Shown: piece after piece, positions 10,398-44,350 of the stretch
Layout of the letters: every line of letters starts with the position of its first letter
Numbering within the stretch: position 1 is the first letter of the stretch
Assembly: GCA_964035545.1 (NCBI GenBank)
Contig: OZ037771.1
Coordinates: 2,057,628 to 2,121,627, forward strand
DNA length: 64,000 nucleotides
Source: Bugula neritina
Taxonomy: Eukaryota; Animalia; Bryozoa
Reading direction: 5' to 3'
Made by a program: the position numbers and the translations under genes
The notes under the pieces: generated by a model
The model's database searches: none
Seen by the model: only the letters and a program-made list of their open reading frames with translations
What the model was told of the DNA's origin: nothing

Positions 10398-13390
10398 TCA
10401 AGGACACATATCTGTAGTTATACATCTTCCATTGTGTTGAACCAAGCCGGCTGGGCACTGACAACTGGGTTCACAGGGTTTGAGGCAGTCATCTTCGATG
10501 TCCCCTAACGCACGGCTATAGTTTTCACAAGTTTTAGGGCAAACGGGTCCACATTCATCAAACAGGAAGCCTTTTGCTGCATCACAGTTCATGGCTAAAA
10601 CAATTTACTGTTAAGTTATAGCAAAATATACTAAAGGCATTATTACCACATAAATAAAAAACAATTAAATTATATAAATTAAAAAGTTTAACACATTCTA
10701 TGGTTATGTTAAATGATAGAGCCCCAAGAGTGAGTATTTCATTCAATGTTATATTGTGATGTTAGAGAGGTGAAACAACTTCAAGAGAAGACAACTTTGT
10801 CACCATCAGTTACAGAGGTATGAAATTATCTGTTAACAGAGCTCACCGCATCTCTCGTGAGTCCGCCATTGTATCCTGACAAATGAGTTGGCACAGGCTG
10901 CCGAGTACGCTGTCAGGACGTCACAGAGACAGGCAGCGGTGCTGTTACAGGCACACATGTCGTAAACACATGAGTAAACGTAGTCCTCCGGGTCAACCAC
11001 TTTGTGACATGGAGAGAACACTTCACTCTGCAGCAGAAGAGAGAGGCTACATTACTACCAGCTGTGTGCCTGTGCACGCTGCAAAGTCCTACTAGCACTG
11101 TAAGAACTAACCTGTATGATTGCACACTCCTCAATAGCCTTCTTCTTGACATCATATCCTGCTACGTCACACGGATGTTGATCAGACGTCTCGGCAAAAC
11201 AGACAGATCCATTGGCTAGCCAACTTTCTCCAAATTCAGCGTGAGATTTCGCCACGCTGCCTGAAACATTTATAAGCTGTATATAAATGTTATGTTTGAA
11301 TGCAAATAAACTGCATCTGAAAATTTGCCCAAATTTCACATTTCATTTAGAAACATAACTCAGCGCTTTACATCTTTTTAAATGTGCTGCTAAAATATTG
11401 AGAAAATTGGCTAAAACAGTTATATATGCCAGCTAAATAGTCATTTTCATAAAAATGGTTAAATTATGTCAAATTCTTAAGGCCTGGGTCTAACAACACT
11501 TGAAAGTTGCCAGAAACTTACCCATTTCCCAAACTTTAAAAACCAGACACCAAACGCTGCTGCCCCAGCAGTAATTATTGGATTTTATCAAAATACATAT
11601 TTTAACTCACAATTCATCTACCAACTCACGTCACCAGCACTAGTATACAGTGTTAGCAAGGTGGCTTTGTAATACACTTTCTCAAATAAACAGCTTCGCT
11701 CTATTGTCTTTTTCTAAACAGTGTGTTTAGATAACTCACCATTTTTGAGAGTGAGTTCATCTGTGTTGTCATCATTGAAGTTGCCACATAAACCGCAGAG
11801 TTTACTTTTTAGAGTTGTCTCCACCTCCACATAGCCGTATGCTACACCATCCCATGTAAACTGTAATATAGTCAGGTATGAGAGAAAATGTTTTGACCAA
11901 TCAAACTATAAGTCTATTTTTAGCCATAGCCAATCTTAGTATATAAAATAAATAAGAAATTAAATTTTTAAGCATGCGCGATATTGTCCTAAATTAATAT
12001 ATATTCTAAAGAACTAAAACTACTTGTAACGACAAAATTAAAATAATATTTCAAGAAATTTTAATATTATCATTGTTATGATGCCTAAAGAGTATTTAAA
12101 TCAATGTATAAAATATGCTTATTAGTCACACACAAAGAGTATAATAGCAAGCTGGTTGTTATCACCATCTGCCAATAATACGTTTATGTTGTACAATTTT
12201 GGTTATATACAGGTTATACTATGCAGTTACTATTGCTCTTGCAAAGCTTATAAGTTTAATGGTAAGGAGTGACAATTTATATACTTTGAATCCAAGATCA
12301 TCACTGGCTACACTCAAAGTTGTAGGAGTCTCTCTAATAACTAGGCTGCTTGAATGTTGGAAGGGGAAAGTCACATTGACCCCGTTGACCTCTGACCATA
12401 ACCCTTGACCTAGCCGTACTGTCAACTCAGCTGCAACACAGAAGTGAAATACTGTTTTACATAAACTAAAACAAAGAATTGGTTGCAAAATAACTGCACA
12501 GTAGTTTAATTATATCAAAGGCAATTGCTAACCTGTATGATTTATAAGGATTAGGTTTTAAAGCACATTTTATGGGGTGTTGGCAAGTCAGTGAGCAAAT
12601 AAATTGCATTAGGATTAATAGACGTCAAGTTTATAGACTCTGGTGACAAACATGACTACTTTAATAGTACAACTGATGAGCTAATCTGTAGCATAACTGA
12701 CAACATCAGCCGAATGCACGGCAGCAAAGGCAGCGCATACCCTGAAACCACAGACCACTAGCAGGTTGGTCAACATCCAGGTATACCTGTTTCAATGACG
12801 ACGCCTTTTATCCAAGAAACGCTCTGAGTATCTCGATCATCGTGAATGGCTATCACTTTGAAGGAGTTAGAGTCACAATCTGATACCATTTCATAGGAGC
12901 AAAAGCCTGTGTGTAGAGTAAAACAGCATTGTAGTACAGTTTACCATATATAAGAATACATATATATAAGCATACATATAAGCTTATATATAAGCATGCA
13001 TATAAGTAGTGTAGGGAATTTAAATGCTCAAAGCCACTGACAGATAATGTGAGAGAAAAAAATTCTACAAAAAGCCTTTCTGGTGTCTCTCAATGAACTT
13101 GATATCTGATGGCTGTCTCTACACTGCAGGTTTACCACTGCTCAATGATACTTTATAAACACAACTTTAGTGAACGATGGTAGCAATAAATCTCAGTAGT
13201 CTACAATAGTTCTAGTAAATTTAATCTAAAACTTTGCAGCGAACTACTCAACTTATACGTCTCATAACTTATAGACGCGAGTAACTCGCTGAGAATATTG
13301 TTTGTGTCACCTTGGAAGTGGATGGTTTCTCCGTCAAATGTCTTATAGTGAGGATCACCGTACACCTTGCACACGGCCGGCTGCTTCACA
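10398..13390 (-). other. VWD-C8-TIL C-terminal cassette of the Kielin-like protein
   Basis: VWD: [21 protein letters not shown]...[16 protein letters not shown]8: [22 protein letters not shown]...[16 protein letters not shown]: [20 protein letters not shown]...[21 protein letters not shown]. Confidence 0.93.
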
Positions 13391-43300: not shown

Positions 43301-44350
43301 AATGCAAGTGTAAATTGATAGTCAACAAACCTTTTGAGTGCAGCTCAAACTTTAAAATTTTAATATTTATGTTTGCTTTCTGAGATCAAAACTTGATAAA
43401 AGCAGTAAAAATATTTGCACTTTTAAACCTGGTTACTTGCTTTGCTGACAAAAGTTTGCTGTGCAAAATATTTGAAGTAAAGTTGTGGTATGACCAGTAC
43501 CACTGTGCATTTAGTCACTATCAGGTGTTGAAGCTTTAGCTGCTGCATGTCTTTTAGAGAACAAGGGAAAAGTTTTACAAAAATTACTACTCAAAATATT
43601 GGTAAAAAAAACTAGGTATTGGTGTAAATTGTTTTTCACCTACAAAACAGCTTTTTAAAAGGTTAAAATTGTAATATAGGCATAGAAAGTTAGATGGAAC
43701 AGATTGCTACAAGCTCAAGTAAACGATAGCCTCCTATAACTACTTTGTATGTTTTTCCTTAGTGCCATTAGACTTGGTGCCCACATTGTATTTATCTAAA
43801 TTCTAAAGGCTGAATCTAAATCTGTTGTGGTTGTAAATCTCAAGCACACAGCATGCAACTAAATGAGGCAAATGAACACTAACAGATCTAAATAAATTTC
43901 AAGTCAAACTCTGTTATAATCACAACGAGCAAGACTAAGAGTAAGTGTGCTATAGTTATATATGCTACTGATGGGCAAAGTAATATTTGTAGTTAGACTG
44001 ACACTCTTGGACAATCACAATCACAATGACACAATTGATGCTGAATTTAATTATAATACTTTAATCAAATTTTGTGAATGTAATCTAGTCATACTCATAG
44101 TGGTAATGACAGTTATAAAAACAATAATGAAGATGATAAAGATTGTAATAGCAATGAGCTTTAGACTCATAACAAGTCAATAGGCTTAGGCTCATAGCAA
44201 TACTAATACTATTACTAATAGTAATAGACATTAGCCTTGGGCTTAGCCTTGGGCTCCAAATTGGTCTAACTCTAAGGCTAAAGAAATTGACATTCTGGTT
44301 AACTCACCTAAGATCAGTAGCAAAACAGCTGGTCTGTACTCCAAGATCAT
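10398..44350 (-). CDS. KCP: Kielin/chordin-like giant secreted protein (~2,697 aa): signal peptide, coiled coil, VWC-like, EGF, Kunitz, G[YF][DN] repeats, VWC-like, degenerate tyrosinase domain, G[YF][DN] repeats, Cys-rich module, ~24 VWC, VWD, C8, TIL
   Basis: 48 GT-AG exons with consistent phases, totalling 8094 nt: 44308-44350, 42517-42584, 39383-39547, 38539-38587, 38197-38349, 37692-37905, 35895-36001, 35141-35319, 34283-34531, 33387-33621, 32692-32890, 32210-32305, 31600-31748, 31073-31223, 30545-30733, 30053-30206, 29734-29849, 29081-29280, 28586-28753, 27889-28133, 27434-27527, 27105-27278, 26110-26298, 25693-25869, 25249-25403, 24828-24968, 24392-24538, 23482-23661, 23194-23373, 22504-22683, 21241-21420, 20840-20979, 20340-20461, 19887-20144, 18733-18945, 17799-17970, 17072-17318, 16396-16632, 15677-15914, 14522-14709, 13817-13991, 13311-13574, 12787-12906, 12285-12430, 11740-11860, 11112-11260, 10847-11027, 10398-10594. 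N-terminus [27 protein letters not shown]. Repeated CxxCxC...CCPxC motifs; [14 protein letters not shown] and LCGLCGNFN (VWD). The symbol means KCP-like architecture, not proven orthology. Confidence 0.88.
14221..14279. repeat. (TA)n microsatellite
   Basis: Pure TA run. Confidence 0.95.
14925..15104. mobile_element. Perfect palindrome (89-bp arms, 2-nt loop) formed by a Penelope-like pseudo-LTR fragment, flanked by (TA)n
   Basis: 14925-15013 is the exact reverse complement of 15016-15104. TA runs lie at ~14858-14902 and 15101-15172. A homologous single arm lies at ~50598-50690. Confidence 0.8.
15012..15043 (+). ncRNA. Minimal hammerhead ribozyme core (Penelope-like type)
   Basis: CTGAAGA-T-GGGTAC-agtg-GTACCC-GAAA-TA-TC: CUGANGA core, 6-bp stem II, GAAA, palindromic vestigial stem III and UH site. 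Confidence 0.7.
21724..22517. repeat. 49-bp minisatellite, ~16 copies, overlapping the splice donor of exon 22504-22683
   Basis: Unit ACAAGCTATACTCAAGTAAGTATAATATAGGTCACAGTACATCACAGAG; the array ends inside the exon's last 14 nt. Confidence 0.95.
27278..27425. repeat. ~43-bp degenerate tandem repeat (~3.4 copies) filling an intron and including its acceptor
   Basis: gctacaatacgcaatatggaaacaatatta... / gctacaatatacatcatggaaacagtatta... / gttacaatatacaatatgaaaacagtatta... Confidence 0.7.
31600..34345 (-). other. Tyrosinase (type-3 copper)-fold domain within the Kielin-like protein, metal ligands degenerate
   Basis: [22 protein letters not shown]; [24 protein letters not shown]; LTIPYFDWT; FGGNG...GCV..HPF; CLRRDF; WVGGH...[20 protein letters not shown]. 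Confidence 0.9.
37526..37717. repeat. 32-bp minisatellite, 6 copies, each containing the exon end and AG|GTAGGC donor of the Kunitz exon
   Basis: Unit GCCTACCTGTCATAGCCTGAAGGGGAATGTCA-like, repeated at 32-bp spacing from 37526; the last copy is the real exon/intron junction. Confidence 0.93.
37760..38349 (-). other. EGF-like domain followed by a Kunitz/BPTI domain (part of the Kielin-like protein)
   Basis: EGF: [14 protein letters not shown]...[15 protein letters not shown]. Kunitz: [11 protein letters not shown]...[35 protein letters not shown]. Confidence 0.9.
38816..38972. repeat. 19-bp minisatellite (AGCAAATGGACCACCTTGT), ~8 copies
   Basis: Direct tandem repeat, intronic. Confidence 0.92.
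40328..40488. mobile_element. ~160-bp MITE with terminal inverted repeats
   Basis: Left end TAGGTGCAGTCAAGGAGAAATTGAGA versus right end TCTCAATTTCTCCACTACTGCTCCTA; homologous copies at ~41014-41240 and 57957-58114. Confidence 0.7.
41014..41240. mobile_element. Decayed, internally duplicated copy of the same MITE family
   Basis: Shares GTGGAGAAAATTAGA..., TAGATTAGAAATGTAGCAAAAGAAG (twice), AAGAATTTCAACCCT and ATTTAAGAACTTGGGCTA. Confidence 0.6.
42860..43072 (+). mobile_element. tRNA-derived SINE
   Basis: A box TGGTCTGATGG and B box GGTTCGAGCCC. The ~210-bp body is shared with 49997-50213 and 63221-63439. Approximate TSD taatgct(tg)cagat. Confidence 0.9.

What the first reader, a model, noticed from the sequence alone, without database searches (positions are those of the whole stretch)
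10398..44350. Kielin-like giant with an embedded EGF-Kunitz-pseudo-tyrosinase cassette in one continuous ORF
Seen: 48 exons splice in phase without a stop. There is one signal peptide and no second start, so coiled coil, EGF, Kunitz, Gly/aromatic pentapeptide repeats and a tyrosinase fold join ~24 VWC repeats plus VWD-C8-TIL. Established: Kielin/KCP and Crossveinless-2/BMPER are VWC+VWD BMP modulators without tyrosinase or Kunitz domains. Tyrosinase, Kunitz, EGF and VWD modules are typical of invertebrate adhesive, cuticle and biomineral matrices. Inference: this is a chimeric extracellular scaffold that may link BMP/TGF-beta binding to matrix assembly, cross-linking or protease control.
Basis: partly seen in the sequence, partly recalled or inferred. 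Interest (0 to 1): 0.85.

Follow-up and report, generated by a model that had tools for sequence, protein, structure and literature searches.

The report
Long-form Kielin/KCP gene with dead tyrosinase
This is one real, large secreted-protein gene: the animal's copy of the BMP regulator Kielin/KCP in an ancient long form that carries an EGF-Kunitz-inactive-tyrosinase insert, a layout already present in the gene models of dozens of other animals but never studied.

Summary
On the minus strand I rebuilt a chain of 47 canonical GT-AG exons, from ATG 44350 to TGA 10398. It gives about 2,630-2,650 aa with no internal stop.

Pfam confirms EGF, Kunitz, tyrosinase, VWC, VWD, C8 and TIL exon by exon.

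A sister-species contig covers exons 4-20. Every one of those exons keeps its frame and its splice sites. dN/dS is 0.035 overall and 0.014 for the tyrosinase-like exons.

The tyrosinase domain is a pseudoenzyme. All three CuB histidines and one CuA histidine are replaced.

The same colinear architecture is found in public models named "kielin/chordin-like protein" from more than 30 species: brachiopod, molluscs, chelicerates, a crustacean, crinoids, tunicates, amphioxus, sharks, coelacanth, sturgeon, a salamander and some teleosts. The insert lies inside KCP, between its coiled-coil/VWC1 exons and the VWC array. In one teleost the annotated KCP transcript skips it.

No RNA data exist for this organism, so whether the insert is always included is untested. 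The gene is a new member of a known but functionally undescribed kind. Interest is moderate.

The parts
44308..44350 (-). Exon 1: start codon and first part of the signal peptide ([14 protein letters not shown])
   Evidence: ATG followed by the strong donor TAG|gtgagt. Not covered by the sister-species contig.
42517..42584 (-). Exon 2: rest of the signal peptide ([13 protein letters not shown]|QSS) and start of the coiled coil
   Evidence: Acceptor ttttcag|, donor AAA|gtatgt; in phase with exons 1 and 3.
39383..39547 (-). Exon 3: short coiled coil ([18 protein letters not shown]) and first half of a VWC-like module
   Evidence: Matches the orthologues' motif 'LKxQNxEL..R...LExCEC'. Homologous to a teleost KCP exon at L005 8236-8409.
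38539..38587 (-). Exon 4: second half of the N-terminal VWC-like module; ends in phase 1
   Evidence: Sister species: 100% aa identity, AG/GT kept.
38197..38349 (-). Exon 5: EGF domain and first Cys of the Kunitz domain; first exon of the insert
   Evidence: Pfam EGF E 1.8e-5. tblastn hits from all orthologues. Sister species 98% aa identity.
37692..37905 (-). Exon 6: Kunitz domain (P1 = Glu, lengthened loop) and first GYDR motif
   Evidence: Pfam Kunitz_BPTI E 1.8e-12. The alignment gap comes from the 32-nt array that follows the donor.
35895..36001 (-). Exon 7: Gly/aromatic-rich linker
   Evidence: Sister species 97% nt and 100% aa identity, AG/GT kept. Weak Lingula tblastn hit.
35141..35319 (-). 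Exon 8: GY(D/N)R repeats and linker
   Evidence: tblastn hits from orthologues. Sister species 95% aa identity.
34283..34531 (-). Exon 9: VWC-like Cys motif and the tyrosinase N-terminus ([21 protein letters not shown]) in a single exon
   Evidence: One stop-free exon. Pacifastin/VWC-like Pfam hit. Sister species 93.6% nt but 100% aa identity.
33387..33621 (-). Exon 10: tyrosinase-like CuA region (first His replaced by Tyr; second and third His kept)
   Evidence: Pfam Tyrosinase E 4.4e-10. Alignment.
32692..32890 (-). Exon 11: middle of the tyrosinase-like domain
   Evidence: tblastn 34-42% identity to orthologues. Sister species 98% aa identity.
32210..32305 (-). Exon 12: tyrosinase-like CuB region with all three His replaced (Ser, Arg, Phe)
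   Evidence: Pfam Tyrosinase E 1.3e-3. Alignments.
31600..31748 (-). Exon 13: C-terminal extension of the tyrosinase-like domain
   Evidence: Lingula tblastn hit. Sister species 100% aa identity.
31073..31223 (-). Exon 14: G(Y/F)(D/N) repeats
   Evidence: Many tblastn hits to orthologue repeat regions. Sister species 100% aa identity.
30545..30733 (-). Exon 15: G(Y/F)(D/N) repeats
29734..29844 (-). Exon 16: Pro-rich linker (…[10 protein letters not shown])
   Evidence: Sister species 95.5% nt and 100% aa identity, AG/GT kept. Motif shared with fragments from other taxa.
29081..29244 (-). Exon 17: Cys-rich domain; last exon of the insert; ends in phase 1
   Evidence: tblastn 34-43% identity to orthologues. 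The read-through after its donor evolves neutrally.
28586..28753 (-). Exon 18: first VWC of the array; starts in phase 1 with no ATG
   Evidence: Sister species 97.6% nt identity, AG/GT kept. No start codon in the preceding intron.
27889..28133 (-). Exon 19: VWC
   Evidence: Pfam VWC E 5.8e-12.
27434..27527 (-). Exon 20: VWC part
   Evidence: Pfam VWC.
27105..27278 (-). Exon 21: VWC
   Evidence: Pfam VWC E 7.8e-12.
26110..26298 (-). Exon 22: VWC
   Evidence: Pfam VWC E 1.4e-9.
25693..25869 (-). Exon 23: VWC
   Evidence: Pfam VWC E 4e-7.
25249..25403 (-). Exon 24: VWC
   Evidence: Pfam VWC E 1.1e-6.
24828..24968 (-). Exon 25: VWC parts
   Evidence: GT-AG chain; CxxCxC and CCxxC motifs.
24392..24538 (-). 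Exon 26: VWC parts
23482..23661 (-). Exon 27: VWC parts (180 nt, phase 0-0)
23194..23373 (-). Exon 28: VWC parts (180 nt); near-identical copy of exon 30
22504..22683 (-). Exon 29: VWC parts (180 nt); weak donor GAT|gtactg, followed by a 49-nt array
21241..21420 (-). Exon 30: VWC parts (180 nt)
20840..20979 (-). Exon 31: VWC parts
20340..20461 (-). Exon 32: VWC parts
19887..20144 (-). Exon 33: VWC
18733..18945 (-). Exon 34: VWC part plus an unusual 37-aa linker with RTKR|S; the 3' end is uncertain
   Evidence: sequence shown.
17799..17970 (-). Exon 35: VWC
17072..17318 (-). Exon 36: VWC
16396..16632 (-). Exon 37: VWC-like
15677..15914 (-). Exon 38: VWC
   Evidence: Pfam VWC E 4.5e-4.
14522..14709 (-). 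Exon 39: VWC
   Evidence: Pfam VWC E 4.3e-7.
13817..13991 (-). Exon 40: VWC
   Evidence: Pfam VWC E 9.4e-9.
13311..13574 (-). Exon 41: last VWC and start of VWD, including the GDPH motif
   Evidence: Pfam VWC E 5.4e-9 and VWD E 4.3e-6. GDPH at aa 2313.
12787..12906 (-). Exon 42: VWD
   Evidence: Weak Pfam VWD hit. tblastn 39-44% identity to orthologues.
12285..12430 (-). Exon 43: VWD. The donor AAA|gtatat at 12285 is preferred; the model used 12231.
11740..11860 (-). Exon 44: end of VWD (GLCGNFN)
   Evidence: Pfam VWD E 1.2e-10.
11112..11260 (-). Exon 45: VWD-C8 linker
   Evidence: tblastn hits from orthologues.
10847..11027 (-). Exon 46: C8 domain
   Evidence: Pfam C8 E 3e-21.
10398..10594 (-). 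Exon 47: TIL domain and stop codon (TGA 10400-10398)
   Evidence: Pfam TIL E 5.2e-9. Aligns to the last residues of all orthologues.

Best explanation
The stretch holds one 34-kb, 47-exon minus-strand gene. It is this invertebrate's orthologue of Kielin/KCP (kielin cysteine-rich BMP regulator) in its ancestral long form.

The product is a secreted, Cys-rich protein of about 2,630 aa with these parts, in order:
- signal peptide
- short coiled coil
- VWC-like module
- a 732-aa insert: EGF, Kunitz-like domain, Gly/Tyr repeats, VWC-like knot, tyrosinase-fold domain without a copper site, G(Y/F)D repeats, Cys-rich domain
- about 22-24 VWC repeats
- VWD (with GDPH), C8 and TIL

Shown here: the gene structure, the domain content, orthology by colinear alignment, very strong purifying selection on the insert, and loss of four of the six copper-binding histidines.

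Inferred from what is established for KCP, chordin and Crossveinless-2:
- The VWC array binds BMP/TGF-beta-family ligands and tunes their access to receptors.
- The coiled coil and the VWD-C8-TIL end provide oligomerisation and anchoring to the matrix or cell surface.
- The dead tyrosinase domain, with its flanking Tyr-rich repeats, acts as a binding or structural module and not as an oxidase.
For: Gene structure:
- 47 GT-AG exons in frame with a single stop.
- Exon-wise Pfam hits for every claimed domain.
- Exon GC 48% against intron GC 31%.

Sister-species contig L002:
- Exons 4-20 have no real indels, conserved splice sites and 95-100% aa identity.
- dN/dS is 0.035 overall and 0.014 for the tyrosinase-like exons (52 synonymous against 3 non-synonymous changes).
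- The 47 nt after the exon-17 donor evolve neutrally.
- The intron before the VWC array holds no start codon or signal peptide.

Comparison with other species:
- The model aligns end to end with a shark KCP-like protein in one HSP, residues 16-2650 against 298-3091, 1,330 bits. It also gives single colinear HSPs with Lingula, Limulus, Argonauta, a crinoid and amphioxus.
- More than 30 species carry PF00264 + PF00093 + PF00094 models.
- The long smelt form is 84-90% identical in VWD-TIL to ordinary teleost kcp.
- In Echeneis the insert exons lie inside the KCP gene, on the same strand and in the same order.

Copper ligands: mapped and checked against solved hemocyanins and tyrosinases.
Against: - No RNA run exists for this organism, so no junction is confirmed by a transcript.
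- RefSeq splits the insert from KCP in several teleosts. Inclusion may therefore be conditional.
- Orthologues carry a TSPN/laminin-G domain after the signal peptide. I could not find one here. Exons 1-2 lie outside the sister-species contig, so the 5' end rests on sequence features alone.
- BMP binding is inferred from family knowledge and was not tested.
Confidence: 0.82

Rival explanations
1. The insert (exons 5-17) is an optional, alternatively spliced block. The main transcript would join exon 4 directly to exon 18, giving a classical Kielin/KCP (coil plus VWC array plus VWD). The long form would be a minor or tissue-specific isoform.
For: - The insert is 2,196 nt and is bounded by phase-1 introns on both sides, so skipping it keeps the frame (and my arithmetic).
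- In Echeneis naucrates the annotated 2,105-aa KCP skips intact, colinear insert exons. These are annotated as a nested 738-aa gene.
- A whale-shark model also skips this region.
- Xenopus Kielin and mammalian KCP, as described, lack the insert (my own knowledge).
Against: - dN/dS of 0.014-0.07 shows that the insert is translated and strongly constrained.
- Most non-teleost models include it.
- The teleost split could be an annotation artefact.
- There is no RNA evidence here either way.
Confidence: 0.3
2. There are two independent genes: a secreted EGF-Kunitz-tyrosinase-like protein ending after exon 17, and a separate VWC/VWD Kielin gene that the reader merged with it.
For: - If the exon-17 donor is ignored, the frame runs 16 codons further to a stop at 29034, and an AATAAA lies about 45 nt beyond.
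- Several teleost annotations list the insert as its own gene.
Against: - The 327-nt gap has no ATG-started ORF longer than 12 aa, and exon 18 starts in phase 1 without a Met.
- The read-through codons evolve neutrally: 5 of 6 changes are non-synonymous.
- The donor and acceptor are conserved in the sister species.
- KCP-type exons (coil plus VWC) lie upstream of the insert, so the insert sits inside KCP and not beside it.
- The teleost 'separate genes' start at an internal Met without a signal peptide.
Confidence: 0.06
3. The tyrosinase domain is an active phenol oxidase that cross-links the flanking Tyr-rich repeats or matrix proteins, as in adhesive or shell-matrix tanning.
For: - Tyr-rich G(Y/F)D repeats flank the domain.
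- Related choanoflagellate Kunitz-tyrosinase giants such as P0017 keep all six histidines.
Against: - In the window CuB has none of its three His (Ser, Arg, Phe) and CuA lacks the first (Tyr).
- Every KCP-embedded orthologue examined lacks at least CuB His1 and, in the copy type most like the window's, His3.
Confidence: 0.03

Closest known systems
Kielin / KCP (kielin cysteine-rich BMP regulator; Xenopus Kielin, mouse and human KCP/CRIM2)
   Same: - Secreted protein with a long array of VWC (chordin-type CR) repeats followed by one VWD-C8-TIL unit at the C-terminus.
- N-terminal coiled coil followed by a VWC.
- Colinear full-length alignment to RefSeq 'kielin/chordin-like' proteins.
- The long fish form is 84-90% identical in VWD-TIL to ordinary teleost kcp.
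   Different: - Carries the 732-aa EGF-Kunitz-pseudo-tyrosinase insert, which the studied frog and mammalian proteins lack.
- Has no detectable TSPN/laminin-G domain.
- BMP binding is untested.
Long-form 'kielin/chordin-like protein' models, e.g. Lingula XP_013412584, Limulus XP_022244270, Hemiscyllium XP_060698749, Pleurodeles, Latimeria, Octopus, Haliotis
   Same: - Same domain order from the coiled coil to TIL.
- Same degenerate copper sites.
- Same Cys-rich domain directly before the first array VWC.
   Different: - Lingula, Argonauta and Ptychodera have the insert twice in tandem; the window has it once.
- Most have a TSPN domain.
- The window's CuB site has also lost the second His, which many orthologues keep.
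Crossveinless-2 / BMPER
   Same: VWC repeats followed by VWD (with GDPH) and TIL; an extracellular BMP modulator (my own knowledge of the family).
   Different: Only five VWC repeats, about 700 aa, no coiled coil and no insert. It was not retrieved in my searches because of their length limits, so no direct comparison was made.
Type-3 copper proteins (tyrosinase, catechol oxidase, molluscan hemocyanin units)
   Same: - Pfam PF00264 fold.
- The best solved relatives are hemocyanin units and Streptomyces or Bacillus tyrosinases (orthologue domain, E down to 1e-97 summed and 8e-26 single).
   Different: Four of the six copper-ligand histidines are replaced, so the domain cannot form the di-copper centre.
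Choanoflagellate Kunitz-tyrosinase giants (Salpingoeca urceolata P017573, Hartaetosiga balthica P016931, S. rosetta 'mantle protein 9')
   Same: Kunitz domain about 300 aa upstream of a Cys-knot plus tyrosinase unit, colinear with the window's insert.
   Different: - No VWC or VWD by Pfam.
- Some keep all six histidines.
- They are transcriptome-derived ORFs of unknown function.

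Membership tests
Kielin/KCP | Long tandem array of VWC (chordin-type CR) repeats | tested here: met
   Pfam VWC hits in at least 13 exons. The model holds 24 CxxCxC and 20 CCxxC signatures.
Kielin/KCP | A single C-terminal VWD-C8-TIL unit | tested here: met
   Pfam VWD, C8 (E 3e-21) and TIL (E 5e-9) in exons 41-47. The stop codon aligns with the orthologues' C-termini.
Kielin/KCP | Orthology to bona fide KCP | tested here: met
   - End-to-end colinear HSP with shark KCP-like.
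- The long smelt form is 84-90% identical in VWD-TIL to percomorph kcp.
- The teleost insert lies inside KCP.
No phylogenetic tree or synteny test was done.
Kielin/KCP | N-terminal signal peptide, TSPN/laminin-G domain and coiled coil | tested here: inconclusive
   A signal-peptide-like N-terminus and a coiled coil are present. No TSPN was found in the window or the genome, but sensitivity on split exons is low.
Kielin/KCP | Binds BMPs and modulates BMP/TGF-beta signalling | not testable with these tools
   Requires a pull-down or SPR and a signalling assay.
Tyrosinase (type-3 copper oxidase) | PF00264 fold | tested here: met
   Exon hits at E 4.4e-10 and 1.3e-3. Orthologue domains match nearly the whole profile, positions 2-3 to 213-214 of 214.
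Tyrosinase (type-3 copper oxidase) | Six histidine ligands (CuA H, H-x8-H; CuB H-x3-H ... H) | tested here: not met
   CuA: Tyr, His (offset by one residue), His. CuB: Ser, Arg, Phe. It is a pseudoenzyme.
Kunitz/BPTI inhibitor | Six-Cys fold | tested here: met
   Pfam E 1.8e-12 for profile positions 15-52. Six Cys are present in the model, with C1-C2 and C2-C3 longer than in BPTI (by inspection).
Kunitz/BPTI inhibitor | Canonical reactive loop with a P1 residue suited to serine proteases | tested here: not met
   P1 is Glu after a lengthened loop. P1 differs among orthologues: Lys in shark, Gly in Lingula, Ser in Ptychodera, Gln in Limulus (by inspection).

The most novel reading that the evidence does not exclude
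The EGF-Kunitz-pseudo-tyrosinase block may be an ancient, phase-symmetric module inherited from pre-animal Kunitz-tyrosinase proteins, and it may be alternatively spliced into KCP. On this reading the textbook Kielin/KCP is only the skipped isoform. The long isoform would use a copper-less tyrosinase pocket and its flanking Tyr-rich repeats as a phenol- or tyrosine-recognition device. That device would tether the BMP-binding VWC array to particular matrices or gate it.
Probability: 0.2. Interest if true: 0.65.

Novelty: new member of a known kind. Interest (0 to 1): 0.42.

Why it matters
KCP/Kielin is a studied regulator of BMP and TGF-beta signalling, for example in kidney fibrosis and dorsoventral patterning, and it is described as a VWC + VWD protein. 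This window and its relatives show that the ancestral bilaterian gene also carries a 700-aa insert with a catalytically dead tyrosinase domain.

That domain evolves under some of the tightest constraint in the protein, with dN/dS of 0.014. The insert survives in sharks, coelacanth, sturgeon, a salamander and some teleosts.

In the papers I could search it gets one passing sentence (PMC11667028). It is therefore an unstudied, conserved part of a known signalling regulator, and a clean case of a pseudoenzyme kept for a non-catalytic role.

For this genome the practical result is a curated gene model. The finding itself is an ordinary orthologue and not a new kind of chimera.

Tried and rejected
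- **RNA evidence.** The look-up of sequencing runs found only one DNA-type run and no RNA.
- **TSPN/laminin-G domain.** A local HMM built from five orthologue N-termini, run against all six-frame segments above 38.4 kb, gave nothing below E = 2. The same alignment run against the whole genome gave nothing.
- **Extending the sister-species contig to cover exons 1-3.** Two pattern scans of metagenome contigs returned nothing.
- **Automatic gene models.** My two dynamic-programming models were imperfect. The first missed the CuA exon and the VWD exons. The second, with a homology bonus, ran exons into introns. The final model was curated by hand.
- **Lingula isoform X3 as an insert-skipping isoform.** Rejected: it is only N-terminally shorter.
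- **Literature.** Searches combining kielin or KCP with tyrosinase or Kunitz found no functional description.
- **Joined protein.** The spliced protein was never sent to a database search tool. Database searches used single exons by reference or ids of public proteins. The joined model was used only inside the script sandbox for local alignments.

Full report
**What is in the sequence**

The window is AT-rich eukaryotic DNA. On the minus strand between 44350 and 10398 there are dozens of stop-free, Cys-rich segments.

Exon-by-exon Pfam scans, all by reference, gave these hits:
- EGF (38186-38431)
- Kunitz (37691-37918)
- Tyrosinase in two pieces (33124-33621 and 32209-32340)
- VWC in at least 13 segments
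- VWD in three segments
- C8
- TIL

Two automatic exon-chain searches were imperfect. I then curated a model of 47 exons. Every exon has an AG acceptor and a GT donor. The total is 7,953 nt with a single terminal stop. One donor is better placed at 12285, which gives about 2,632 aa.

It has 24 CxxCxC signatures, 14 G[YF][DN] motifs, a GDPH motif at the start of the VWD, and 11.7% Cys. Exons average 48% GC and introns 31%.

Exons 1-2 (44350-44308 and 42584-42517) splice into a convincing signal peptide. Exon 3 continues it as a short coiled coil.

**Independent test of the exons**

A 68-aa public fragment 95% identical to part of the CuA exon led to a 28-kb metagenome contig from a closely related species (L002). 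It aligns to window 39424-27349 through exons and introns alike.

Exons 4-20 include the two I had doubted (7 and 16) and the exons on both sides of the critical 29081/28753 junction. All of them have:
- no real indels
- conserved AG and GT
- no stops
- 93-98% nucleotide identity and 95-100% amino-acid identity

The introns are 70-91% identical with many indels.

| Exon group | dN/dS |
|---|---|
| All 834 codons compared | 0.035 |
| Five tyrosinase-like exons (52 synonymous, 3 non-synonymous changes) | 0.014 |
| Repeats, linker and Cys-rich domain | 0.031 |
| First VWC exons | 0.072 |

The 47 nt that would extend the frame past the exon-17 donor carry six changes, five of them non-synonymous. 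They are therefore not coding. The 327-nt intron before exon 18 has no ATG-started ORF longer than 12 aa.

**One gene or two**

No RNA run holds this locus, so transcript proof is missing. The comparative evidence is strong.

A search of 1.8 billion representative proteins with the CuA exon alone returned many giants of 2,200-4,200 aa. In the script sandbox, my model gives single colinear alignments across both halves with proteins named kielin/chordin-like from Lingula, Limulus, a shark, Argonauta, a crinoid and amphioxus. The alignment to the shark protein runs from residue 16 to 2650, the last residue of the model.

tblastn shows the same exon order in the window as in all of them, ending at their C-terminal TIL. 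Pfam finds Tyrosinase plus 22-32 VWC plus VWD in Limulus, shark, crinoid, Lingula and the salamander Pleurodeles.

A search with the shark insert found the architecture in more than 30 species: sharks, rays, a chimaera, coelacanth, sturgeon, a salamander, teleosts, tunicates, bivalves, gastropods, cephalopods, a scorpion, spiders, horseshoe crabs, a mantis shrimp and crinoids.

**Is it really KCP**

The VWD-TIL end of the long smelt protein is 84-90% identical to the ordinary 2,100-aa kcp ("kielin cysteine rich BMP regulator") of percomorph fishes, which lack the tyrosinase hit.

In Echeneis naucrates a 738-aa "tyrosinase" gene lies nested, on the same strand, inside the KCP gene. tblastn on that locus gives this order:
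1. signal peptide
2. TSPN
3. coil/VWC exon
4. EGF, Kunitz, tyrosinase and Cys-rich exons
5. the KCP VWC array

So the insert sits inside KCP and not beside it. The annotated teleost KCP skips it.

In the window the insert (exons 5-17) is 2,196 nt and is flanked by phase-1 introns. Skipping it would therefore also stay in frame. This is an inference without RNA support and is kept as the main rival.

**The tyrosinase domain**

I aligned the window's domain with orthologues and with relatives that keep the canonical motifs. I checked the ligand columns against solved hemocyanins and tyrosinases.

| Copper site | Ligand 1 | Ligand 2 | Ligand 3 |
|---|---|---|---|
| CuA | Tyr | His (shifted by one residue) | His |
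| CuB | Ser | Arg | Phe |

All KCP-embedded copies of the type most like the window's have lost CuB His1 and His3. The loss is therefore old, yet the domain is the most constrained part of the protein.

Choanoflagellate giants share the Kunitz, Cys knot and tyrosinase order. They have no VWC or VWD, and some keep all six histidines. This suggests that the block predates animals as an active enzyme.

The Kunitz loop is lengthened with Glu at P1, and P1 is not conserved among orthologues (by inspection). Protease control is therefore doubtful.

**Differences from orthologues**

- Most orthologues have a TSPN/laminin-G domain between the signal peptide and the coil. I found none in the window or the genome, with limited sensitivity.
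- An alpha-amylase gene on the same strand at about 54-59 kb bounds the locus upstream.
- Lingula, Argonauta and Ptychodera carry the insert twice; here it occurs once.

**Literature and novelty**

Searches found only one passing remark that some spiralian tyrosinases exceed 3,000 aa and carry a "kielin/chordin-like domain" (PMC11667028). An argonaut eggcase proteome lists kielin/chordin-like proteins as abundant VWC proteins.

The architecture is thus public in annotation but functionally undescribed. The window's gene is a new member of that known kind.

**Method note**

The joined protein was never sent to a database search tool. Those searches used single exons by reference or ids of public proteins. 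The joined model was used only in local scripts.

Noticed in passing
window 37526-37709: A 32-nt tandem array of 5.8 copies lies directly after the exon-6 donor. Each unit repeats the exon's last 10 nt with an acceptor-like 'cttcag' in front and the donor 'gtaggc' behind. The sister species has two more units. Neither 32 nt nor the 64-nt difference is a multiple of three, so the array is intronic, but it offers a row of decoy splice sites.
   Followed up: partly
window 21577-22660: A 49-nt tandem array of about 20 copies fills the intron after exon 29. It is built from that exon's 3' end (…CLCD) plus its weak donor gtactg. This is the second case in this gene of an exon end plus 5' splice site being amplified in tandem.
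   Followed up: partly
window 23178-23379 and 21225-21426: Exons 28 and 30 with about 11 flanking bases are 97% identical copies 1,953 nt apart, while the exons before them (27 and 29) share far fewer residues by eye. This looks like an exon-sized duplication or gene conversion within the VWC array.
   Followed up: partly
window 18733-18850 (exon 34): A 37-aa non-VWC linker interrupts one VWC and contains RTKR|S, a consensus furin-type site. The sequence TGTCTGGAT in the exon resembles TGTCTAGAT at the next acceptor, so the true 3' end of exon 34 is uncertain.
   Followed up: no
window about 54200-58770, minus strand: The upstream neighbour on the same strand is an alpha-amylase (GH13) gene. 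Pfam Alpha-amylase hits 55815-56084, and a signal-peptide-like start lies near 58700. A long (TG)n/(CA)n microsatellite at about 54400-54700 explains the GC-skew dip.
   Followed up: partly
window 42831-42980: A GC-rich island (49-52% GC) lies in intron 1. Its translation (GLEPMTS…) looks like a tRNA-derived SINE or a tRNA-like element. It is not part of the coding chain.
   Followed up: no
L005 (Echeneis naucrates LR584057.1) 8564-12927: The teleost KCP gene contains intact EGF, Kunitz, tyrosinase-like and Cys-rich exons that the annotated KCP transcript skips. These exons are annotated as a nested 738-aa gene starting at an internal Met. A whale-shark KCP model likewise skips the insert.
   Followed up: partly
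proteins P0373-P0402 and P0192-P0210: The G(Y/F)D repeat region of the Lingula and shark proteins draws 35-48% identical matches over 13-25% of the query. The matches are to large bacterial proteins: Syntrophomonadaceae, filamentous-hemagglutinin-like, VirB10-like, and PF25296. They are probably repeat or low-complexity similarity.
   Followed up: no
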